From the IMG/VR virus record IMGVR_UViG_3300034072_002211, positions 186,001-250,000 of that record: a stretch of 64,000 bases of DNA; one strand, 5' to 3'. The notes beneath the pieces were generated by a model. The model was not told the DNA's origin. It saw nothing but the letters and a program-made list of their open reading frames with translations, and did no database searches. Of the stretch, positions 3,832 to 62,357 are shown piece by piece. Positions within the stretch are counted from its first letter, which is position 1. Each line of letters begins with the position of its first letter. The translations under genes and the position numbers were made by a program.

Positions 3832-3907
3832 GCCGATCTCCTTGTTGCCTAGCCTCTTGATAACACCAAAGTGGTATCAGTCAACCAGGAGGTGACTGAA
3901 CAGTTCC

Positions 3908-6489: not shown

Positions 6490-6513
6490 TGCCGATCTCC
6501 TTGTTGCTTCCTA

Positions 6514-17307: not shown

Positions 17308-17347
17308 GTCCTGTTTAGCAGAACTGGTGAGGGTGTCAACCAGTTTT
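17308..17347 (-). promoter_or_regulatory. repeated early-promoter/hairpin element
   Basis: GTCCTGTTTAGCAGAACTGGTGA..GTCAACCAGTTTT. Confidence 0.8.
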
Positions 17348-19070
17348 AGGAGAAAAGATGCGGCTCCAAGAGGCATCCAACATGCCAGTGGCAGAACTCC
17401 TCCATGAGGGTGTCCTTCTCAAATCCCAGGTAGCTTGCGAACTCCTGGAAGCCCAGGTCGCAATGCCGGATCTTGATGTCAGTGTTCTTGAAGAAGCGCA
17501 CGTTGGCTTGCCAGATGATCCGGCTGATCTCAAGCTCTGCGGCCGCTGGGATCTTTGCGCGAGCGCGCAGGCTCACGTAGGGCGCAGCATAGGGAACGCG
17601 GGCCTTGGCTCCACTACCCAGGATAACGCTGAGCCCGCCATAGTCGGAGCCAACAATGAAGTCCCGGAGGTCCACCACGTCATAGTATTCAGTGCCCGCA
17701 TAGTCACCGAAGTCGCTGAGGATGACCTGATCGACGATCTTCACGCCTTGGGGCAAGAGATCCAAAGCTGAACGGATAGTACCGCCGGTCACCGTGTCAT
17801 CTTCGACCAGCACATATTCACCATCAGGAATGTTCTGCGCCTGCTCCTCGAGAAAAGGAAAACCCACGCGCTCAGCACGGAACTGTGGCTTCCGTTGGGC
17901 TTCACTGACTGCGAAGTAACGGGTGCTCTGAAACATCTCATCACCGGGGAAGAACGGATCCAGGCTGAGAGTTAGGCGGTCACCAACGACCTTCTCAGCT
18001 TGTGCGAGCTGTTCGCTCACTGGAATGAGGTGGACCTTGTTCTGATGGCCGAGACTTTTGAACACCTGTGCGATACCAAGTCGAACCGTGCTCTGGAGTT
18101 GGATCCTGCGCTTCTCGAGTTCGCTTTCATCAATGATGCTGTGCCAGCGACGAATCGCGAGGTTCTCTTCATTGCGGATCAGGTAGGGCAGTTCGCCCGT
18201 GTCCTGCTTGTCCCAGGTCAACAGGTAGTCGCGGACCTTGGTGTTCAGATGGTCATGATTGCCTTCGCGCGCCAACTTGCTCGAGATGTCGCTCCGCGGG
18301 ATCATGATCGACTGGCCGGGAAGAGCCTCACCAAAGCCTTCGTTATCGGAACCGTAGACGTAGAAGACCCGCAGATATTGACCAACATGGAACTTGAGGT
18401 ATTCCTGGAGCCGCATGACCACATCGGTGAAGTTGATCTCGGCGGGCATGTAACGGGCCGCCCAGGGGTCACAGTCCAGCCAGTTGCTCTCTTGCGTGGC
18501 CAGCTCAACCATCGAGCAACGATGCTCTGCGGGGATGGCAGCGGTGCCACCATACTTCTGCCCCACATAGCTGTCGTGACCGGGCGCAAAGTATCCACCC
18601 AGAACGCTGTAACCCTGATCTTCTGCGATCTTGCGCGCCTCGTCCATCATTGCGATGTGGCCGTTGTGGATGGGAGCCATGCCGCCCGTGGTCACTAGCA
18701 CAATGGGCTCACGGCTGCGATCGGACTTCAGCCATGCGATGAAATGCTTGCGGACCTTCTCCAGTGGAGTGGTCATGAAGACAGGATCCCAAGCCTTGTG
18801 CGACATCGCGAGCTGGGGCAAGCCGTCGTCGAAGAAGCCCGCGCGGTAGAGATCCTTGCTGTCCTGAGTCTTCTCATAAACCCGACGGTAGCAGGGATCC
18901 GCGAGAGCTTTCCAGGCATACCGCTGGGCGGTGCTCATGCCCTCCTCCAAAAGCCTACGGCCTGCGAGGTGGATGTCATTGTGTCCACTCAACGGTTCAA
19001 GCCCGAGGAGCTCATAGAGATTCTCCTTGGGACGATCCATTGTGATACCGCAGGCGTAGGTGTCTGTCAT
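17346..19070 (-). CDS. J-domain-like + NMN/NaMN adenylyltransferase + type I phosphoribosyltransferase fusion
   Basis: NLYELLGL...ALADPCYRRVYE; TGGMAPIHNGH (HxGH), FYVYGSD; VLVEDDTVTGGT PRPP-binding loop. Confidence 0.8.
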   Translation of the reverse strand: MTDTYACGITMDRPKENLYELLGLEPLSGHNDIHLAGRRLLEEGMSTAQRYAWKALADPCYRRVYEKTQDSKDLYRAGFFDDGLPQLAMSHKAWDPVFMTTPLEKVRKHFIAWLKSDRSREPIVLVTTGGMAPIHNGHIAMMDEARKIAEDQGYSVLGGYFAPGHDSYVGQKYGGTAAIPAEHRCSMVELATQESNWLDCDPWAARYMPAEINFTDVVMRLQEYLKFHVGQYLRVFYVYGSDNEGFGEALPGQSIMIPRSDISSKLAREGNHDHLNTKVRDYLLTWDKQDTGELPYLIRNEENLAIRRWHSIIDESELEKRRIQLQSTVRLGIAQVFKSLGHQNKVHLIPVSEQLAQAEKVVGDRLTLSLDPFFPGDEMFQSTRYFAVSEAQRKPQFRAERVGFPFLEEQAQNIPDGEYVLVEDDTVTGGTIRSALDLLPQGVKIVDQVILSDFGDYAGTEYYDVVDLRDFIVGSDYGGLSVILGSGAKARVPYAAPYVSLRARAKIPAAAELEISRIIWQANVRFFKNTDIKIRHCDLGFQEFASYLGFEKDTLMEEFCHWHVGCLLEPHLFS

Positions 19071-24311: not shown

Positions 24312-24363
24312 TGTCGATCTCCTCGTTGCCTATACACCAGTCCTAGCATGAACTGGTGACCTG

Positions 24364-27725: not shown

Positions 27726-28505
27726 TTATGCCCTCTCGAATACGATATCAGTGCGGATGATGATCTTCTCCTTGTCCCACTCCTGAGAGCCCTGCTGGAA
27801 GGGCTCCCCATCGTGAAGCAGCCGATGGTCGAACAATAGCGCATGACCAGCGCGTGGCTTGTTGGCGAAGATGACTTCGTCATCGTGACCTGCTCGGTCC
27901 CAATCACTGAAGTCCATTTCGTCCATACGCTTGCCGACTTGTGGATCCCTGAGGAAGCGTGTGGCCCCATACTCGTTGGTCGTCAGGTAGATGACCAGGC
28001 TCATGAGGGTCCGCTGGGTCTCTGTCTTGGCATAGGTGCCATCATAGTGGGCGACCAGCTGTCCGCCATCCTCATAGCGGATAAAGCGCATCAGCGGATT
28101 GACGCCAATAGGCCGCCAGAGGCTGTGGTTGTCGTGGTCCGTGGGCGTGAATGGGTCACAGACTCGCACGTCGGGAAGGAAGGGCTTGAGGCGCCGCCAG
28201 AGGACGTCTGCGAAGGCTTCGTTGAAATTGCTCAGACGGAAGTTGCCGATCTGCTCATAGGGCTTGTTCGCGTAACCGTCCAGTCCTACCGCCTGCCATG
28301 CGTTGCGACGGAGCCCGTCGAGCAGAACGCTGACGATGCTCGGTGGGAGCAAGTTGCTCGCTGTGAAAGCCTTGGCACCATTCTCGAGGTCATGAGCCTT
28401 GTACGACCACACGGGATCGCAGAGGTAGTCGCCGCCGAAATACCCAGCAGAGATAATCTTGTTGGCGTAGTCCGAATAGTCGAAAGAGTTGACGAATCCG
28501 CTCAT
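27726..28505 (-). CDS. 2OG-Fe(II) oxygenase (prolyl-4-hydroxylase-like)
   Basis: RFIRY..G...AHYDG (HxD), distal LLHDG His, IIRTD Arg. Confidence 0.85.
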   Translation of the reverse strand: MSGFVNSFDYSDYANKIISAGYFGGDYLCDPVWSYKAHDLENGAKAFTASNLLPPSIVSVLLDGLRRNAWQAVGLDGYANKPYEQIGNFRLSNFNEAFADVLWRRLKPFLPDVRVCDPFTPTDHDNHSLWRPIGVNPLMRFIRYEDGGQLVAHYDGTYAKTETQRTLMSLVIYLTTNEYGATRFLRDPQVGKRMDEMDFSDWDRAGHDDEVIFANKPRAGHALLFDHRLLHDGEPFQQGSQEWDKEKIIIRTDIVFERA

Positions 28506-29500
28506 GCTGCCCTCCAGGCCGGGTTATCCCAACCACCCTTAACACCAGCTTGCATGACGTCAAGATGGACAGCGGGCGACCGCCCCAGATACTTGTGCGC
28601 GTTGTAGCGATGCATCCGCTCCAAGTTGCCCACGTATTCGTCATATTGACGATAGTCATCCTCGCTGCCCTTTTCGTCGAGGATTTGATCGACCATGATG
28701 CGGGCATTGGTATGCCACTTCATGTGCGTGAACAACTCCACGAAATCGTAGGGCGCACCGAAGACGACCTCATCCGTGGTCGCGTCGAACATATCACCCG
28801 TGGGCGCACGTTCCAGCACCTCGCGCGGCACGCCGAGGAACTCGCCGATCGCATAGACCTCGGACTTGAACATATCGCTGATCAGCTGGAGATCGACCAT
28901 ACCGTCGCTGGCCTTGCCGAAATAACCCAGGTAACCACCCTCGCTGAGGTTGGTCGTGCCGATGACCAGGCCGGGCTGACCCTGACCGGCCAGGACGCTG
29001 GTGATGTAATAATAGGTCGGAGTGCGGGCGTAGCTGGTGACCTGTCCGCGGCACCAGTAATACTTCTCCTCGACCGCCGATCCCAGCACGGCCTCCACGC
29101 TGTTGATGATTGCCTCGCTGATCGGGGAGATGTCGATCTCCAGCGGGTTGACTGCGAATGCCTCGCAGACTTGCTTGGCCAGATTGGCCGCCTTGGTCTG
29201 CCCCGTTACGCCGAGGTTGGTGTGATCAGGCATGGTGACTGCCACGATACGCTCGATAGGCGAACCCGGTTCCTGCTGAGCCCGTGCGACCAGACCGAGA
29301 ACCACAGCACTGTCGATGCCGCCGGAAACCGCGACCACTGCGCTCTTGAGCCCGCTCTGTCTGTAATAGTCGTTGAGCAGCTTGACCTTGGCCTCAACGA
29401 CTCGCTCTACGTTGAAGCCTCGCTGAAGCCGACACATCTCAAGGGCCTCCTTGAGTGGCTGAGACATCTGCATGTTCGTTGCGTGATTACGAATTTCCAT
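28502..29500 (-). CDS. nadE: NH3-dependent NAD+ synthetase
   Basis: VAVSGGIDSAVV PP-loop, GTTNLSEG..GYFGK.SDG, DMFKSEVY..GEFLGVP...L.RAPT. Confidence 0.9.
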   Translation of the reverse strand: MEIRNHATNMQMSQPLKEALEMCRLQRGFNVERVVEAKVKLLNDYYRQSGLKSAVVAVSGGIDSAVVLGLVARAQQEPGSPIERIVAVTMPDHTNLGVTGQTKAANLAKQVCEAFAVNPLEIDISPISEAIINSVEAVLGSAVEEKYYWCRGQVTSYARTPTYYYITSVLAGQGQPGLVIGTTNLSEGGYLGYFGKASDGMVDLQLISDMFKSEVYAIGEFLGVPREVLERAPTGDMFDATTDEVVFGAPYDFVELFTHMKWHTNARIMVDQILDEKGSEDDYRQYDEYVGNLERMHRYNAHKYLGRSPAVHLDVMQAGVKGGWDNPAWRAA

Positions 29501-29511
29501 GTTGCTATTCC

Positions 29512-29718
29512 TTAGCAGGTGGACTGGAGGACGACCGAACCATCTGCCCGTTCGCAAAGGACGACGCTGACCATGTGAGCCTGGCTCTTGCGCGGCTTGA
29601 AATGCTCGGTAGCCTTGACCTTGGCCTGGTAAAGCGATGAAGCGTAGAGCTCAATCTGCTTGCCGTTGAAAAAACCCATGTAACCGCAGTCGCCGGGGGT
29701 CTTTTCGTTAATTGTCAT
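29512..29718 (-). CDS. small phage protein
   Basis: AGGAGATCG RBS and promoter element. Confidence 0.75.
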   Translation of the reverse strand: MTINEKTPGDCGYMGFFNGKQIELYASSLYQAKVKATEHFKPRKSQAHMVSVVLCERADGSVVLQSTC

Positions 29719-37042: not shown

Positions 37043-37114
37043 TTCCGATCTCCTGTCTGCGTTTCCGTATCACCAGTTCTATAGCAAACTGGTGAGCAGT
37101 CAACCAGAATCTGG

Positions 37115-39634: not shown

Positions 39635-41329
39635 CTAAGCGTCAACCTGTTCGTATTGACGTAACAGCGCAATGGTGTTTCTGAGCCCGTAAGCCACTGT
39701 GAAAGCACCGAAACGTGGCCCATCGCTTGAACCCAAGAGACATTCGTAGAGAGCTTGGAACCATGACCGCAACGGCTCAAACTCATGCTTCTTGCCGACC
39801 TCATAGACCTGATACTGATAATGCTCGGCGGTCATGTTTTCGAGCATCAGAGAGAAACGGGTCGCAAGCTCACTGAATGCTGCCCGCTCCTTCTCGGTGG
39901 GTTCTCGGCGAGAACGCTCAAACAGCCCCTTGTCGGTTGCGTAGGCGATGACCTTGGGAGCCATTTCCCGCGCATAAGCCGCGGTCGCGTCGGCGAACTC
40001 ACGACCCTGCATCAAGTAAGCGAGCAGGTTCTCTGGCTGCTTGGCCTGAGCCACAACAGCCAAGTTGAGCATGAGTCCATGGGAGATGTCAGAGCTCAGT
40101 GGCTCAGGCAATTCCACGCGGAAGTGCCACGTGGCGTCATCGGGCGTCGTCTCAGCCTTCTGCCGCAACTTGACATACTGGTCTTCCAGCTGGGGCACGA
40201 TCTCTCTGTAGAGCTTCTTTGCCGCGCGTGGGTTCTGAAACATGAACAGCATCAGGGAGCCAGTCGACCCATAGGTCAACCACTGCTCGACCGTAAAGCC
40301 GTTGCCCTTGCTCTTGCTGATCTTTGCGCCGTTTTCGTCCAGGAACAGTTCATAGGTCAGGTTGAGCGGAGGGGTTCCGCCGAGGATCCGACAGATCTGG
40401 TTGGAAGCCTTGACGCTGTCAATGAGGTCCTTGCCAGACATCTCATAGTCCACGTCAAAGTAGACCCAGCGCATCGCCCAGTCGACCTTCCACTGAAGCT
40501 TGGCATTGCCGTTGTGGCTCATCTGGCCACAGTGCTCACCGTCGTCCGTGACCCAGCCGATGTATCCACGTGCGCCAGTTGCCTCGGCCTTGACCTGCAG
40601 AACAGGGCCCTTGCCACACCAACGCGGCATAAACGGACTGTAGGTCGCCTTGCGATCATCCCCCAGCGTGGCGAGCATGATCTCCTGAATCTTGTCGAAG
40701 TTGTCCCAGACGCGGTTCAGCATCTCGTTGAACTTGCCGGACTTGTAATAGCGCGAGGAGCTCACAAAGCTCACAGTGCTGCGGTCGGGCGATGCTCCCA
40801 CTTGGCCGCCATTGTAGTCCTTGAGGATGCGATCCACAAACTCGCAGAGCTTGTCGTTGTTGGCTTCGGCAAAGGTCATGGGATCAACCATGACTTGCGT
40901 GACACCCGGATCGTTGGAATAGGGCGAAGGAACCTCACTGAGCGGCAGGCCCAGATACTCGTTCATCCACTCGGGCATGTCGTCAGGGACCTTACGCATT
41001 GCGTCATAGTCATCCGAGAACATGATCAGACGGGTCTTGTAGGCGTTCTGCGTGAGCTCATTGAAAGCGCGCATCACCCAGAGGGTGCGGACCACCTCAC
41101 CAAAGGTGCCGATATGCGGAGCGCCCGAGGGACCATAGCCGGTCTCAAAGGTCACCACATCACCAGGCTTCTTGCCCTTCTTCTCGATATGAGCGAGAAG
41201 GCTGCGGGCCTCCTGGAAGGGCCAAGACTTTGCCTGGTCGAAAATGGTAGCCTCCTTTGCCTGCTCTGCTTTGATGGCACGGATCCGCTCGATGAGGGCT
41301 TCCTCTTCCCAGCGGTTCATCATAGCCAT
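39635..41329 (-). CDS. lysS: class I lysyl-tRNA synthetase
   Basis: TGYGPSG.PHIGT, KLQWKVDWAMRW, EMSGKDL, KISKSKGN, GPRFG. Confidence 0.95.
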   Translation of the reverse strand: MAMMNRWEEEALIERIRAIKAEQAKEATIFDQAKSWPFQEARSLLAHIEKKGKKPGDVVTFETGYGPSGAPHIGTFGEVVRTLWVMRAFNELTQNAYKTRLIMFSDDYDAMRKVPDDMPEWMNEYLGLPLSEVPSPYSNDPGVTQVMVDPMTFAEANNDKLCEFVDRILKDYNGGQVGASPDRSTVSFVSSSRYYKSGKFNEMLNRVWDNFDKIQEIMLATLGDDRKATYSPFMPRWCGKGPVLQVKAEATGARGYIGWVTDDGEHCGQMSHNGNAKLQWKVDWAMRWVYFDVDYEMSGKDLIDSVKASNQICRILGGTPPLNLTYELFLDENGAKISKSKGNGFTVEQWLTYGSTGSLMLFMFQNPRAAKKLYREIVPQLEDQYVKLRQKAETTPDDATWHFRVELPEPLSSDISHGLMLNLAVVAQAKQPENLLAYLMQGREFADATAAYAREMAPKVIAYATDKGLFERSRREPTEKERAAFSELATRFSLMLENMTAEHYQYQVYEVGKKHEFEPLRSWFQALYECLLGSSDGPRFGAFTVAYGLRNTIALLRQYEQVDA

Positions 41330-41801: not shown

Positions 41802-41858
41802 TTTCGATCTCCTGTTTTCGTTTCCGATAACCAGGTGATAGCAGAAACTGGTGAGGCG

Positions 41859-59294: not shown

Positions 59295-60827
59295 TCATGC
59301 GGCGTAACTGACCTGCCCTTCCCAGTTGCCAACATACTTGTTACCAACCCGCTTCTTGCTGGTCTCGTAAACTGCCAGGACGTCCGGAAGGATGCTGTAG
59401 AGGACATTGATCTGTCCGTCCTGGAAGATCTGCTTACCCGTCTGCCGGTTGACCATTGCGTGAAGGCTGGGGTTGTCAATGGCCATGCGAATCTTGGGAG
59501 CCATGACCTCGAACTCCTTAGCGCCCATCCCGAACCATTCAAAGACCATAGTGGAGATCGTAGCGTTGACCATCACGCCGTGGCCCTTACGGCAAAGTGG
59601 GCAGGTGCTGTTCTGCTTGATGTTGTAAACGTGACCGCAAGGATCGGAGCAGCGAGTCCAGACGTTGTCCTGCTTTGCGTAGGTCTTTGCGCTGATCTCA
59701 CGGTCCTCGCCCTCGAGGACCAAGCCCTTGGCCGCGCGGGGCCACTCGATGGCTTCCACGTAGCCATGCTCCTTGAGGTTGCCCTCGAAGTCGTAGATAA
59801 AGCCTTCGGGCTTGCCCTCACACTTGCGAAGCACTCGGCCGCACATTTGCTGGTAGAACGCAATGTTGCCGACCTTGCGAGTGAGGAAGCAGAACTTGGC
59901 CAGCTTCTCGTCAAAGCCCTCGCAAAGAGCGTCAACGCTGATCAGCACCTCAGTCTCGCCCCGGTGGAAGCGCGCGAAGATTTCCTCACGGACCTTAGCA
60001 GCCTGACGGGGCACATAGTCGACATCACCAACCACACCCTTGCCTGCCGTGACCACCTCGCACTTGATGCCCTCACCCAGGAACTGCGCTTCCAGCATCT
60101 TGCTATGGTTGGTGTCGTCGGTGAAAACAATCGTGCGCTTGTTGGAATGACCAGCAGTGGCGAGCAGCCAGGTCTTCGCCACGTGGGCACCGGGGGTTTC
60201 AAAGTAGCGGGGACGGGCAAGATCACCGCGCGCGATCAGCTCGCTCATTGTGGCCGCGATCACAATGCGATCACCATACCATTCCTCGAGGCTCTCACCC
60301 GGATCGTTCTTCTCACGGTAAGGAGTTGCGGTGAAGCCGACCACCTTTGCGTTGGGCCAGTTCTTGCGAATCTTCTGGAACTCAGCAGCCGTTGCCTTGT
60401 GGGCTTCGTCGAAGAGGATCATTGTGGGAACAAACGAGGGGTCAAAATAGAGATCGTTCGTGACGTTGATGTCCAGGGTGTTGGTCATCGTCTTGGGGAG
60501 AGTCACAAGCAGGTTGCGCTTATAATCACACACAAGCGGATGGCTTTCTGCGCCAACGAGGTAGCTCTCAATTTTGTCGTGGAGGGCGGAGGTCTCAACT
60601 CCAAAGCCATGCTCCATGGTTGCGACCGTCTGGCCCAGGAGGACCTGAAGGTTCACAATAACCAGCACCCGGCCGCCGCGCTGAATTTCCTCATGCGCGA
60701 CATCGCCCATGACCACAGTCTTGCCATAGCCCGTTGGAGCCACCACCAGAGCAGACGGATTTTTCTCTAGCAAGCTAAACACTTGCTTAGTTACGTTGCG
60801 CTGTTCCTCGCGGGGCTTGATTCGCAT
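59295..60827 (-). CDS. SF2 DEAH helicase (RadD/ResIII-like) with C-terminal Zn finger
   Basis: APTGYGKT, DEAH, TATP, EGFD, QMCGRVLR, C..PC..C..C. Confidence 0.9.
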   Translation of the reverse strand: MRIKPREEQRNVTKQVFSLLEKNPSALVVAPTGYGKTVVMGDVAHEEIQRGGRVLVIVNLQVLLGQTVATMEHGFGVETSALHDKIESYLVGAESHPLVCDYKRNLLVTLPKTMTNTLDINVTNDLYFDPSFVPTMILFDEAHKATAAEFQKIRKNWPNAKVVGFTATPYREKNDPGESLEEWYGDRIVIAATMSELIARGDLARPRYFETPGAHVAKTWLLATAGHSNKRTIVFTDDTNHSKMLEAQFLGEGIKCEVVTAGKGVVGDVDYVPRQAAKVREEIFARFHRGETEVLISVDALCEGFDEKLAKFCFLTRKVGNIAFYQQMCGRVLRKCEGKPEGFIYDFEGNLKEHGYVEAIEWPRAAKGLVLEGEDREISAKTYAKQDNVWTRCSDPCGHVYNIKQNSTCPLCRKGHGVMVNATISTMVFEWFGMGAKEFEVMAPKIRMAIDNPSLHAMVNRQTGKQIFQDGQINVLYSILPDVLAVYETSKKRVGNKYVGNWEGQVSYAA

Positions 60828-60911
60828 TTGTTGACTCCGGTTATATCCGATCTCTTGCCACCTGTATAAAGAGGTGAGGCAAGCGAGTCAACTCTGGTTT
60901 TCACCTTTTTT

Positions 60912-61196
60912 TGCTCGATCTAGATTCACCGGTGACTCTATCCCAGCCGAGCCACACCATCCTCCACGAGATCCCGAACCAACCGGGGTACCGCTTCATC
61001 GGACCTCACCGCGCCAGACTACTTTGCTTGGGTCTCGAGCCCCGCCCGTTTCATCTCAGTGAATCGATCTCTGCTGGAGGGGGTCCTCATTCCCTCACCG
61101 AACGGAAGCACCCATGAAAGCAGGATAGGCCGTAGCTAAAGCCGCCGTTCAAAGCACCAAGAACCTGCGGGCTTTCCCCACCTGTTCCTCAGCAGT
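60912..61196 (-). ncRNA. candidate structured ncRNA (~285 nt)
   Basis: promoter TTGACA-N17-TTAACA (61233-61205); long-range helices; GAAA tetraloop. Confidence 0.55.
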
Positions 61197-61248
61197 TATG
61201 GTGATGTTAAGGTGAAACTGCGGTGCTTGTCAAGCTGCCAAACAGAAA

Positions 61249-61694
61249 AGTTTTGGGTTGCAAGACCGGTTTCCCCTCAATCCCGGCACCGCCCCGTCCC
61301 AGGGCCTCACTGATGCGTCCTTGTTGTCGGGCTCAGGCTTTGTCATCATCCCATTTGGCCTAACACGGAAAGCCCTAAGGCTATACCGATGCCGCTGGGC
61401 GTCTTCCTTCCATCTCGCCAGACCACTCATTAGAAAAACACCTGAGCAGTCCCAACGGGGTACGATCCCGTTGCACAACTTGCAACCCAAAACTCCCGAT
61501 TCAATGTCTGGCGTCCACACTACCAGCACCGGCTTGACAGGGCTATTCAAGAACCCCTGGGGACTCCATCCCCTTGCCTAAAGCACCATAGGTGAGCACA
61601 CACTCAACAGGGAATTGAACCCCGCGCCGCTTGAGGATCTGCTTCCACGTCCGGCCGGACCGCTTCCACAGGGCCACGGCCCCATCATCGAATC
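61249..61694 (-). ncRNA. candidate structured ncRNA (~450 nt)
   Basis: promoter TTGACT-N17-TAGAAA (61729-61701); perfect 16-bp inverted repeat 61249-61264/61479-61494; T-arm-like hairpin near 61601-61635. Confidence 0.55.
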
Positions 61695-61725
61695 GTCCTC
61701 TTTCTAAAAGAAAGCCGCGTTCAAG

Positions 61726-61758
61726 TCAAGAAGGGTGGCTAGAAGCCACCCTTCTTGA
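61726..61758 (-). terminator. hairpin terminator overlapping the next -35 box
   Basis: TCAAGAAGGGTGGC/GCCACCCTTCTTGA 14-bp stem. Confidence 0.75.
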
Positions 61759-61760
61759 TA

Positions 61761-62357
61761 TCAGCCGACCTTGACGGTGAGCTGGGCTTCGAGGTAAATC
61801 TTCTCGCTATGGCCGAGCGAGACGCCATCGGAACCACCGCCCTTGGACGTGCTCTCCAGCATCATTGCGGATGCTGCATAGCTGGCACCACGCGCGTTGC
61901 TCATGATGTCGCGAGCGATTGCCTCACCGAACTCGATGCGCGTCACAGTGCCGCTCAGCTTCTCGGCTTCGGCCTTGGCCTTCTCGATGAGTGCAACACG
62001 GAGATCGCTCTCGGCCTTGCGCTTCTCATGGAGCGGGATGCTGGCGTCGATGTTGTTGATTGCGATGGTCAGCTTGCCCTGCTCGCTCAGCTGGTCGCAC
62101 TTCAGTGCCAGCTGGTCGTTCTGCGTGGCGTCGATGCGGGTCGAAGCCTGAACACGGAACGTGAAGCCATCGGGCTGGTAGGTGAAGTTGCTGAAAGCCC
62201 AGCTGACTTCCGGGAAGAGCTTCTTGGCCAGTTCGAGGGCCGCAGCTTCGAGGGCCGGACGATCCTGGCCATTGACGACGCCCTGGATCCAGGCGCTGAT
62301 CTTCACGGTGGTATTGGTGATCGTGACCTCGTCGGTCATGTTGAATTTGATCTTCAT
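61761..62357 (-). CDS. SIMPL (DUF541)-like protein
   Basis: LRVALIEKAKAEAEKL...I.F.E...A..M.....L..V. Confidence 0.6.
   Translation of the reverse strand: MKIKFNMTDEVTITNTTVKISAWIQGVVNGQDRPALEAAALELAKKLFPEVSWAFSNFTYQPDGFTFRVQASTRIDATQNDQLALKCDQLSEQGKLTIAINNIDASIPLHEKRKAESDLRVALIEKAKAEAEKLSGTVTRIEFGEAIARDIMSNARGASYAASAMMLESTSKGGGSDGVSLGHSEKIYLEAQLTVKVG

What the first reader, a model, noticed from the sequence alone, without database searches (positions are those of the whole stretch)
61249..61729. Third candidate RNA with a perfect 16-bp closing helix and a T-arm-like hairpin
Seen in sequence: AGTTTTGGGTTGCAAG (61249-61264) and CTTGCAACCCAAAACT (61479-61494) enclose 214 nt with nested GCTCAGG/CCTGAGC (61331/61441) and CAACGGG/CCCGTTG. 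Upstream are CTCAA-...CGGGG-TTCAATT-CCCTG-TTGAG and two GTGGAAGC repeats. The promoter overlaps the preceding terminator. Together with the neighbouring RNA this gives about 800 nt of non-coding sequence, the scale of GOLLD-type phage RNAs. The long helix could be an RNase III site.
Basis: partly seen in the sequence, partly recalled or inferred. Interest (0 to 1): 0.65.

Follow-up and report, generated by a model that had tools for sequence, protein, structure and literature searches.

The report
New structured RNA in jumbo phage
The 16-bp helix and the tRNA-like hairpin are real parts of a roughly 450-nt folded non-coding RNA, conserved in six related giant-phage sequences and matching no known RNA family; what it does is still unknown.

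Summary
The window is part of a 277-kb jumbo-phage contig from a subsurface metagenome. The finding lies in a 933-nt non-coding gap between two minus-strand genes: a 198-aa SIMPL-like protein and an SF2 helicase.

Five other independent metagenomic phage sequences carry a homologous element at the same position (64-77% identity). Across the six sequences, 88 predicted pairs are 92.9% canonical. Thirty-seven pairs show compensatory double changes, against a maximum of 27 in 1000 shuffles. G.U cells outnumber A.C cells 65 to 8, so the RNA is minus-sense.

The 16-bp closing helix covaries at 7 of its 16 pairs, and the T-loop hairpin also covaries. Conserved sigma-70-like promoters sit just before the RNA and just after the helix.

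- The nested GCTCAGG/CCTGAGC helix is not conserved.
- TTGAG pairs downstream, not with the upstream CTCAA.
- There is no GOLLD, ROOL, tRNA, tmRNA or other Rfam match.
- The ORF and MITE refutations both fail.

Most likely this is an independently transcribed RNA of a new, rare family. Its helix-closed 3' domain would be delimited or stabilised by the long stem. The function is inferred, not shown.

The parts
61726..61758 (-). Intrinsic terminator of the upstream 198-aa gene: a 15-bp perfect stem with a 3-nt loop. The GC-rich core is flanked by an A-rich and a U-rich arm.
   Evidence: (I3). It is absent at this spot in L025 and L037.
61701..61729 (-). Promoter-like site P1: TTGACT (61729-24), N17, TAGAAA (61706-01). 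The -35 overlaps the terminator's 3' arm. The predicted start is near 61694.
   Evidence: Equivalent sites lie at the same alignment position: L039 and L043 TTGACG-N17-TATAAA, L037 TTGACA-N17-TAAAAG, L041 TTGACA-N16-TAAACT, and L025 TTGACA-N17-AACAAT (read by eye). The window's -10 is weak and was not called by the scan.
61641..61683 (-). 5' leader elements: a GGGCC/GGCCC hairpin (61683-71), and two GTGGAAGC copies flanking the palindrome GTCCGGCCGGAC (61660-49).
   Evidence: (D15). They are conserved in L025, replaced by a larger hairpin in L039, L041 and L043, and absent in L037.
61608..61626 (-). T-loop hairpin: a 6-bp stem with the 7-nt loop UUCAAUU (61619-13), which fits the tRNA T-loop consensus.
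   Evidence: Four of the 6 stem pairs show compensatory changes. Loops in relatives are UUCGAAU, UGCAAUC, UUCAAUU and UUCGAUU.
61593..61607 (-). 5-bp hairpin that abuts the T-stem with no spacer (UUGAG..CUCA).
   Evidence: columns 123-127/133-137; four of the five pairs show compensatory changes in at least one sequence.
61539..61578 (-). Junction with two hairpins: GGGGA-UGGAG-UCCCC (61573-59) and AGGGG-loop-CCCU (61558-39).
   Evidence: covarying pairs occur in both hairpins and in the 3-bp outer stem.
61508..61538 (-). Invariant GUCAAGCCGGUGC followed by a hairpin CUGG-UAGUGUGGACG-CCAG, whose loop keeps GUGG in all six sequences (D-loop-like).
   Evidence: The stem is invariant, so it gives no covariation evidence either way.
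61479..61494 (-). 5' arm of the closing helix (in RNA sense).
61453..61473 (-). Inner hairpin CAACGGG-AUCGUAC-CCCGUUG. In L025 and L037 the loop is T-loop-like (UUCGAAG, CUCGAAA).
   Evidence: columns 265-269/277-281, covarying. It is absent in L039 and L043.
61324..61452 (-). Variable interior of the domain. It includes the window-specific GCUCAGG/CCUGAGC pairing.
   Evidence: Substitutions and indels cluster here in an 89%-identical contig and break the window's minimum-energy pairs.
61265..61323 (-). Conserved 3' part of the domain: CAAGGNCGC, GGRCGGUGCC, and the hairpin GCCGG-[..AGGGGAAA]-CCGGY (61287-65).
   Evidence: The stem covaries G-C to A-U in L039, L041 and L043, and the loop AGGGGAAAC is invariant.
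61249..61264 (-). 3' arm of the closing helix.
61204..61233 (-). Promoter-like site P2: TTGACA-N18-TAACAT, 15 nt after the helix.
   Evidence: TTGACA is conserved in all six, and the -10 varies as TAnnnT/A (TAAAGT, TATACT, TAATGA, TAGTAT).
60828..61203 (-). The neighbouring RNA, which is the long helicase leader. It holds a second helix-closed domain (CUGCUGAGG 61195-87 / CCUCCAGCAG 61080-71), a GAUGAAGC...GUGGAGGAUGG unit (about 60990-60910), a third promoter-like site (60891-60861) and the SD (60838-35).

Best explanation
This is a minus-strand, independently transcribed, structured non-coding RNA of about 450 nt (roughly 61694 to 61245). It belongs to a previously undescribed family found only in a small clade of jumbo phages.

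The 5' third is a compact set of covarying hairpins. One is a canonical T-loop hairpin with a second hairpin stacked directly on it. Another has an invariant GUGG loop, and I infer that this loop docks on the T-loop as a D-loop does in the tRNA elbow.

The 3' half is a 246-nt domain closed by the 16-19-bp helix. The domain has conserved ends and a fast-evolving interior.

I infer that the long stem defines and stabilises the 3' end of the RNA. It would do so either as a double-strand-specific (RNase III-type) processing site that separates the RNA from the next transcription unit, or as a 3' protective stem. I also infer that the folded RNA acts in trans, as a protein-binding or scaffold RNA.

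Shown: conservation, pairing, strand, position, and no homology to known families. Inferred: promoter use, transcript ends, processing and function.
For: Homologues:
- Homologues sit at the same position after the 198-aa gene in L025 (75.5% identity over 661 nt), L037, L038 and L039, and L041 and L043.
- The helicase next to them is only about 35% identical to the window's helicase in L025. The RNA therefore travels with the 198-aa gene rather than with the helicase.

Covariation:
- 88 pairs are 92.9% canonical, against 37-54% when the 3' partner is slid by 1-3 columns.
- 37 pairs show compensatory double changes (shuffle mean 17.7, maximum 27).
- The closing helix is 95.8% canonical, with 7 of 16 pairs covarying.
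- G.U cells outnumber A.C cells 65 to 8, which fixes the RNA on the minus strand, the same strand as the flanking genes.

Other support:
- Promoter-like sites are conserved in position before the RNA and after the helix.
- An 89%-identical contig has no change in 61462-61567, while all its listed changes fall in 61369-61461.
- Indels of 1, 2, 4 and 8 nt against L025 rule out conserved coding. No ORF is shared between relatives.
- There is one copy per genome.
Against: - There is no expression data. No run on record as RNA holds the sequence.
- There are only six independent sequences, all from metagenomes, and the host is unknown.
- The window's own P1 -10 box (TAGAAA) is weak.
- No canonical terminator follows the helix. 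U-richness after it is clear only in the window, so transcription may read through into the helicase leader. The element could then be a cis-acting leader.
- The closest phages by helicase (L005, L006; 70% identity) lack the RNA entirely and carry a peptidase-like gene there. The RNA is therefore dispensable within the clade.
- L043 has two U.U mismatches in the helix.
Confidence: 0.6

Rival explanations
1. The element is a cis-acting structured leader. Transcripts from P1 run through the helix-closed domain and the second domain into the helicase (or, in L039 and L041, the 99-aa gene). The structure would control mRNA stability or translation rather than act in trans.
For: - No canonical terminator follows the helix in L025, L037, L039, L041 or L043.
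- The whole 933-nt gap is non-coding and contains further conserved helices.
- The helicase SD region (GGAGUCAAC, 60830-37) is complementary to an upstream GUUGACUC (60885-92). That upstream segment would be present only in transcripts that start further upstream (I17). The pairing is conserved, with a G.U variant in L043.
Against: - Two further conserved promoter-like sites (P2, P3) lie between the RNA and the helicase, so the helicase does not need P1.
- The RNA is linked to the 198-aa gene, not to the helicase type.
- In L039 and L041 it precedes a different gene.
- The close helicase relatives L005 and L006 lack it.
Confidence: 0.25
2. The 16-bp inverted repeats are DNA-level recombination sites flanking an invertible 214-bp segment (a phase-variable inverton), or a cruciform or protein-binding palindrome. 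In that case the arm-to-arm 'covariation' would reflect homogenisation of the repeats.
For: A perfect 16-bp inverted repeat flanking about 200 bp next to a promoter is the classic look of an inverton. Arms kept identical by recombination would also appear to covary.
Against: - Mismatches in the arms are mostly G.U on the minus sense, not A.C.
- The same G.U bias and covariation hold for many short hairpins that cannot be invertons.
- The interior is colinear in all six relatives.
- No recombinase was found among the neighbouring proteins tested.
Confidence: 0.04
3. The element is a miniature inverted-repeat transposable element (MITE) or another recent insertion.
For: It has terminal inverted repeats. 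The phages closest by helicase lack the element.
Against: - There is no target-site duplication: the flanks are AUCGGG and UUUCUG.
- There is no second copy in the window, in the 277-kb contig, in IMG/VR or in 185,579 bacterial and archaeal genomes.
- It sits at the same syntenic place, always joined to the 5' module, in six diverged sequences.
Confidence: 0.02
4. The element is a small protein-coding gene, namely the 106-aa ORF at 61230-61550(-) or the 107-aa ORF on the plus strand.
For: ORFs of more than 100 codons exist on both strands.
Against: - Both ORFs start with TTG, and no 'GGAGATCG' ribosome site of the type used by this phage precedes the minus-strand one.
- Frame-breaking indels of 1, 2, 4 and 8 nt occur against L025.
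- The longest ORFs in relatives lie in other frames and strands.
- Stop codons of all three kinds occur in every frame of the gap.
Confidence: 0.02

Closest known systems
GOLLD and ROOL RNAs (large ornate RNAs of phages and prophages)
   Same: All are several hundred nucleotides long, multi-domain, phage-borne, non-coding and of unknown function. Each has helix-closed domains and variable inserts.
   Different: There is no match to either covariance model even at E <= 10. The core RNA is smaller (about 450 nt). No tRNA genes lie nearby. Nothing is known about oligomerisation.
tRNA-like modules in non-tRNA RNAs (YrlA/bacterial Y RNA, mascRNA-type elements, the tmRNA tRNA-like domain)
   Same: It has a canonical T-loop hairpin (G-C closing pair, UUCRAWU loop) with a helix stacked directly on the T-stem. 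A second hairpin loop has invariant GG. A long stem is formed by distant sequences, as in Y RNAs.
   Different: ARAGORN finds no tRNA or tmRNA. Rfam gives only a noise-level mascRNA hit (16.8 bits against a gathering score of 42.5). The order of elements is not that of a cloverleaf. No open acceptor end or CCA is present. No Ro/TROVE protein was found among the proteins tested.
RNase III processing stems that flank stable RNAs (rRNA precursor stems, T7 inter-gene sites)
   Same: A 16-20-bp near-perfect duplex is formed by sequences that bracket a structured RNA, at the boundary between two transcription units.
   Different: Cleavage has not been tested. The helix is at the short end for RNase III, and it is imperfect in L043.
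Candidate structured RNAs of viruses from IMG/VR (PMC10690425)
   Same: It is the same kind of object: a covarying intergenic phage RNA absent from Rfam.
   Different: The csRNAs reported there are represented by 3 or more unique sequences. This RNA occurs in a single IMG/VR contig, so it was probably out of that study's reach. I could not check their models.

Membership tests
GOLLD / ROOL | Match to the Rfam covariance model at the gathering score | tested here: not met
   Searches (gathering; E <= 10 on 60600-62000; relatives): no hit.
GOLLD / ROOL | Frequent adjacency to tRNA genes | tested here: not met
   ARAGORN finds no tRNA in the 64-kb window or in 11 related loci.
tRNA / tmRNA | Cloverleaf, or acceptor plus T-arm with a tag, detected by ARAGORN or Rfam | tested here: not met
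tRNA-like structure (T-loop module) | 5-6-bp stem closed by G-C with a 7-nt loop U-N-C-R-A-N-N | tested here: met
   The hairpin at 61626-61608 has the loop UUCAAUU. The stem covaries in six sequences.
tRNA-like structure (T-loop module) | T-loop/D-loop tertiary contact forming an elbow | not testable with these tools
   An invariant GG sits in the 61526-08 hairpin loop. That is suggestive only and needs 3D structure or probing.
Bacterial Y RNA (YrlA) | Rfam model match and a neighbouring Ro60/Rsr (TROVE) gene | tested here: not met
   There is no Rfam hit. There is no TROVE domain among 18 window proteins scanned. The rest of the 277-kb genome was not examined.
MITE | Terminal inverted repeats | tested here: met
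   A 16-bp perfect inverted repeat.
MITE | Target-site duplication and multiple dispersed copies | tested here: not met
   The flanks differ. It is single-copy in the window, the contig, IMG/VR and the genome collection.
Inverton | Segment found in both orientations, with a recombinase nearby | tested here: inconclusive
   All six relatives are colinear and no recombinase was found among the neighbours. Raw reads were not examined for inversion.
Intrinsic terminator | GC-rich hairpin with a short loop, immediately followed by a U-tract | tested here: not met
   The closing helix encloses 214 nt, and the U-run after it is present only in the window. The true terminator hairpin is at 61726-58.
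RNase III substrate | About 20 bp of duplex cleaved by RNase III | not testable with these tools
   The duplex is 16 bp perfect and 19 bp with G.U pairs. Cleavage needs an assay.
Protein-coding gene | Reading frame conserved in relatives | tested here: not met

The most novel reading that the evidence does not exclude
This is the founding member of a new class of large, multi-domain jumbo-phage RNA. It would display a tRNA-elbow mimic (T-loop hairpin plus a GG-loop hairpin) and carry a helix-clamped domain whose interior diverges quickly between strains. On this reading the elbow recruits or titrates a tRNA-recognising factor, such as RNase P or Z, a modification enzyme, a host anticodon nuclease or a phage synthetase. 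The variable insert would then supply strain-specific recognition. This fits a phage clade that also carries aminoacyl-tRNA synthetases and a Tpt1 RNA 2'-phosphotransferase near this locus.
Probability: 0.15. Interest if true: 0.8.

Novelty: new variant of a known kind. Interest (0 to 1): 0.58.

Why it matters
Large, intricately folded non-coding RNAs are rare in bacteria and phages. Each new class (GOLLD, ROOL, OLE, raiA) has opened new biology.

This one is well supported by covariation despite being very rare. It is found only in giant phages from subsurface, wastewater and similar metagenomes. It also combines a textbook T-loop with a long clamped domain whose interior varies.

It gives a defined, testable RNA of 250-450 nt for probing, cryo-EM and RNase III assays. 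It also shows that the gap between the SIMPL-like gene and the helicase in this phage clade is a hotspot packed with structured RNAs and swapped cassettes.

Tried and rejected
Known RNA families:
- Rfam at the gathering score on the whole window, and at E <= 10 on the region and on four relatives, gave nothing above noise. The best hits were sX6 (E = 0.024, overlapping the upstream gene and terminator), mascRNA (16.8 bits) and drum (16.4 bits).
- ARAGORN on the window and 11 loci found no tRNA or tmRNA.

Searches for further copies:
- blastn of the gap against 50,697 GenBank phages found no match.
- Exact scans of IMG/VR with the 16-mer arm gave 13 other single hits that do not extend, so they are chance matches.
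- A conserved 17-mer gave 4 chance hits.
- Two versions of the conserved 3' hairpin motif found only the window's own contig.
- The same motif in 185,579 bacterial and archaeal genomes gave 0 and then 6 hits. All six lie inside coding regions, with no similarity beyond the pattern.

Other rejected ideas:
- Degraded copy of the 249-aa peptidase-like gene that fills this gap in L005, L006 and L009: no tblastn similarity.
- Stop-codon recoding: all three stop codons occur in every frame.
- Origin of replication: no GC-skew inflection, GATC is not enriched (6.4 against 8.1 per kb), and the AGATCG repeats are part of a genome-wide ribosome-site motif.
- Hammerhead or SRP resemblance of short motifs (CUGAUGA-like, GGUCCGG..GGAAGCAG): not conserved in relatives and no Rfam hit.
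- Homology between the 5' module and the shorter T-loop region of L003-type loci: only 12-15 bits with the covariance model (E = 0.09-0.5) and nhmmer E = 0.16-0.65. This stays unproven.

Expression and method notes:
- No run on record as RNA holds the sequence. Two runs guessed to be RNA hold a 234-nt contig, which proves nothing about transcription.
- I did not use the count of structure pairs, because it needs a 536-character typed structure. A script computed the same measures instead.

Full report
**What is there**

The window matches IMGVR_UViG_3300034072_002211 at 100% identity. This is a 277-kb jumbo-phage contig. The run that holds the sequence completely is a subsurface metagenome.

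The finding lies in a 933-nt gap (60828-61760) between two minus-strand genes.
- Upstream in the RNA sense is a 198-aa protein (61761-62357). Some homologues give a weak SIMPL/DUF541 signal.
- Downstream is a 510-aa SF2 helicase (59295-60827; ResIII plus Helicase_C, phrog_16).

I estimate that a perfect 16-bp inverted repeat within 300 nt is expected about 0.005 times by chance in 64 kb.

**It is not coding and not a mobile element**

- Every frame of the gap carries several stop codons of all three kinds.
- The 106-aa ORF at 61230-61550(-) starts with TTG. It lacks the stereotyped GGAGATCG ribosome site that precedes dozens of genes in this phage.
- Against the closest homologue the region has indels of 1, 2, 4 and 8 nt.
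- The longest ORFs in relatives lie in other frames and strands.
- The 16-mer arm occurs nowhere else in the window or in the 277-kb contig. The 13 other IMG/VR hits are bare 16-19-mers that do not extend.
- There is no target-site duplication. HMM and covariance-model searches find exactly one copy per genome.

**Relatives**

DNA searches of GenBank phages found nothing. I therefore walked out from the 198-aa protein, which has 49 homologue clusters, and fetched their contigs.

Five independent sequences carry a homologue of the non-coding region at the same place:

| Locus | Identity to the window region |
|---|---|
| L025 (=L026) | 75.5% over 661 nt |
| L037 (nearly the same as L038) | 64-82% |
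| L039 | 71% |
| L041 | 70% |
| L043 | 77% |

Short contigs that are 89-96% identical to parts of the region also occur in a wastewater metagenome and three other runs.

The region is about as well conserved as the neighbouring coding sequence. The helicase beside it in L025 is only about 35% identical to the window's.

The phages closest by helicase (L005, L006; about 70%) have no such RNA. They carry an opposite-strand, secreted Peptidase_C93-like gene in the gap instead. The gap is thus a mosaic hotspot, and the RNA travels with the 198-aa gene.

**Structure and strand**

RNAalifold on the six independent sequences plus L038 predicts 89 pairs. A script on the six independent sequences alone gave the following for 88 pairs:

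| Measure | Observed | Control |
|---|---|---|
| Canonical cells | 92.9% | 37-54% when the 3' partner is slid 1-3 columns |
| Pairs with compensatory double changes | 37 | mean 17.7, maximum 27 in 1000 column shuffles |
| G.U cells against A.C cells | 65 against 8 | not applicable |

The G.U excess means the structure exists in RNA of the minus sense, the sense of the flanking genes.

The closing helix is 95.8% canonical, and 7 of its 16 pairs covary. The arms in each sequence are:
- window: AGUUUUGGGUUGCAAG / CUUGCAACCCAAAACU
- L025: UGUUUUGGAUUGCGAG / CUUGCAAUCCAAAACA
- L037: UAUUUUGGAUUGUGAG / CUCACAAUCCAAAAUA
- L039: ..UUUUGAGUUGCAAG / CUUGCAACUCAAAA..
- L041: AGUAUUGAAUUGCAAG / CUUGCAAUUCAAUAUU
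- L043: two U.U mismatches

The T-loop hairpin (61626-61608) covaries at four of six stem pairs. It keeps a T-loop-type loop in every sequence: UUCAAUU, UUCGAAU, UGCAAUC or UUCGAUU.

Other covarying elements are:
- a 5-bp hairpin that abuts the T-stem (61607-593);
- two hairpins in a junction (61573-39);
- an inner hairpin (61473-53), which has a T-loop-like loop in L025 and L037;
- a 3' hairpin whose loop AGGGGAAAC is invariant (61287-65).

The hairpin at 61526-08 has an invariant stem and a loop that always contains GUGG.

- TTGAG (61607-03) pairs with the downstream CUCA, not with the upstream CTCAA. There is therefore no open acceptor-like stem.
- The nested GCTCAGG/CCTGAGC helix is specific to the window. 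The interior of the domain (about 61324-61452) cannot be aligned well between relatives.
- In the 89%-identical contig all listed changes fall in 61369-61461, and six of them break pairs of the window's minimum-energy fold. There is no change in 61462-61567.
- The domain therefore has conserved ends and a fast-evolving interior.

**Transcription signals**

- The 198-aa gene ends in a canonical terminator (61758-26).
- P1 is TTGACT-N17-TAGAAA, and its -35 overlaps the terminator's last arm (61729-01). Better versions sit at the same alignment position in relatives, for example TTGACG-N17-TATAAA in L039 and L043.
- P2 is TTGACA-N18-TAACAT (61233-04), 15 nt after the 3' arm. Its -35 is conserved in all six, and its -10 drifts as TAnnnT/A.
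- This pattern is what promoters look like, and it argues for two units. The first is the roughly 450-nt RNA examined here. The second is the long helicase leader, which has its own helix-closed domain (61195-87 / 61080-71) and other conserved motifs.
- No canonical terminator separates the two units. The U-run after the helix is clear only in the window.

**Comparison with known families**

- Rfam 15 gives nothing at the gathering score. At E <= 10 there is only noise, in the window and in four relatives.
- ARAGORN finds no tRNA or tmRNA in the window or in 11 loci.
- The conserved 3' motif is absent from IMG/VR apart from this contig. In 185,579 bacterial and archaeal genomes it gives only six chance hits, all in coding regions.
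- A published screen of IMG/VR reports candidates represented by three or more unique sequences, so it would probably have missed this RNA (PMC10690425).
- The shorter T-loop region in L003-type loci may be a distant, reduced relative in which a small hairpin replaces the large domain. The model scores are not significant.

**Mechanism**

Shown: a conserved, minus-sense, multi-hairpin RNA fold with a T-loop and a helix-clamped domain, present once per genome and next to promoter-like sites.

Inferred:
- The RNA is made from P1.
- The 16-19-bp stem fixes or protects its 3' end, most simply as an RNase III-type processing stem at the border with the next unit.
- The T-loop and the GG loop form a tRNA-elbow-like tertiary module.
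- The RNA works in trans.

I put about 0.6 on the RNA being an independent structured ncRNA of a new family, and about 0.25 on it being the upstream part of a cis-acting helicase leader. Inverton, MITE and coding readings together get under 0.1.

**Context that may matter**

The window encodes a class I lysyl-tRNA synthetase and a NAD synthase. Relatives have a Tpt1 RNA 2'-phosphotransferase, and in L041 a class II synthetase, a few genes upstream. A tRNA-related role is therefore conceivable, but it is not supported by any test here.

Noticed in passing
window, genome-wide (e.g. 3834-3839, 6493-6498, 24315-24320, 37046-37051, 41805-41810): AGATCG occurs 84 times on the minus strand and 18 times on the plus strand. 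About 40 copies are part of a stereotyped ..AACAAGGAGATCGGNAATG.. translation-start motif. That motif is often preceded by one of two or three conserved upstream boxes (e.g. TTATCGGAAACGNAAACAGGAGATCG). This is an extended, non-standard ribosome-site or 5'-UTR signature.
   Followed up: partly
window 60828-60892: The helicase SD region (GGAGUCAAC, 60830-37) is perfectly complementary to GUUGACUC (60885-92). That upstream segment is also the -35 of a third promoter-like site (TTGACT-N17-TATACA). Long transcripts could therefore mask the ribosome site while transcripts from this promoter could not. The arrangement recurs in L005, L025, L037 and L043.
   Followed up: partly
window 61071-61195: A second helix-closed domain (CUGCUGAGG / CCUCCAGCAG) lies just after promoter P2. 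It is conserved and covaries in L025, L039 and L043 (AGG/CCU becomes AAGGG/CCCUU) and is deleted in L037 and L041.
   Followed up: partly
window ~60910-60990; L037 4150-4400; L025 4960-5060: A unit of about 95 nt (YYGAKGAAGC - hairpin - GUGGAGGAUGGUG - hairpin - AGAUCGR) is present in one or two tandem copies upstream of the helicase or the 99-aa gene in nearly all related loci. Its only Rfam echo is a noise-level 'drum' hit (16.4 bits, E = 3.9).
   Followed up: no
L003 4592-4880, L004 599-900, L009 1894-2190, L005 4604-4875, L039 1015-1385, L041 4110-4470, L043 2552-2920: A different conserved non-coding element of about 290-350 nt lies between the 198-aa gene's stop codon and a covarying tetraloop-capped terminator hairpin (GNRA in most loci) in many relatives. 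It is absent from the window. It is another candidate structured RNA with no Rfam match.
   Followed up: partly
L005 4875-5624, L006 4866-5615, L009 2348-2983, L027, L036, L039, L040: An opposite-strand gene for a 240-256-aa signal-peptide protein (YGDCDD motif, weak Peptidase_C93) occupies the gap in many relatives. It sits either instead of or alongside the RNA.
   Followed up: partly
window 39635-41329, 28502-29557, 17346-19070: The phage encodes a class I lysyl-tRNA synthetase, a NAD synthase and a cytidylyltransferase-like protein. No tRNA gene is found in the 64-kb window.
   Followed up: no
window 59295-60827 vs L025 5165-6700, L005 5941-7470: Mosaicism: the window's helicase is about 70% identical to those of L005 and L006, which lack the RNA. 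It is about 35% identical to that of L025, which has the RNA. L037 also has the RNA, but its helicase was not compared.
   Followed up: yes
window 61222-61236 and 61523-61538: The invariant GUCAAGCCGGUGCU before the domain is complementary, in two blocks, to GCUUGAC-A-AGCACCG right after it, which is the -35 region of P2. The block order rules out one continuous helix, but either block could extend the clamp in read-through transcripts. The complementarity recurs in most relatives.
   Followed up: partly
window 61577-61730 and 61326-61567: Short contigs 89-96% identical to parts of the RNA occur in a wastewater metagenome and in runs of two coded 'organisms'. One contig diverges exactly at the terminator (61730).
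   Followed up: partly
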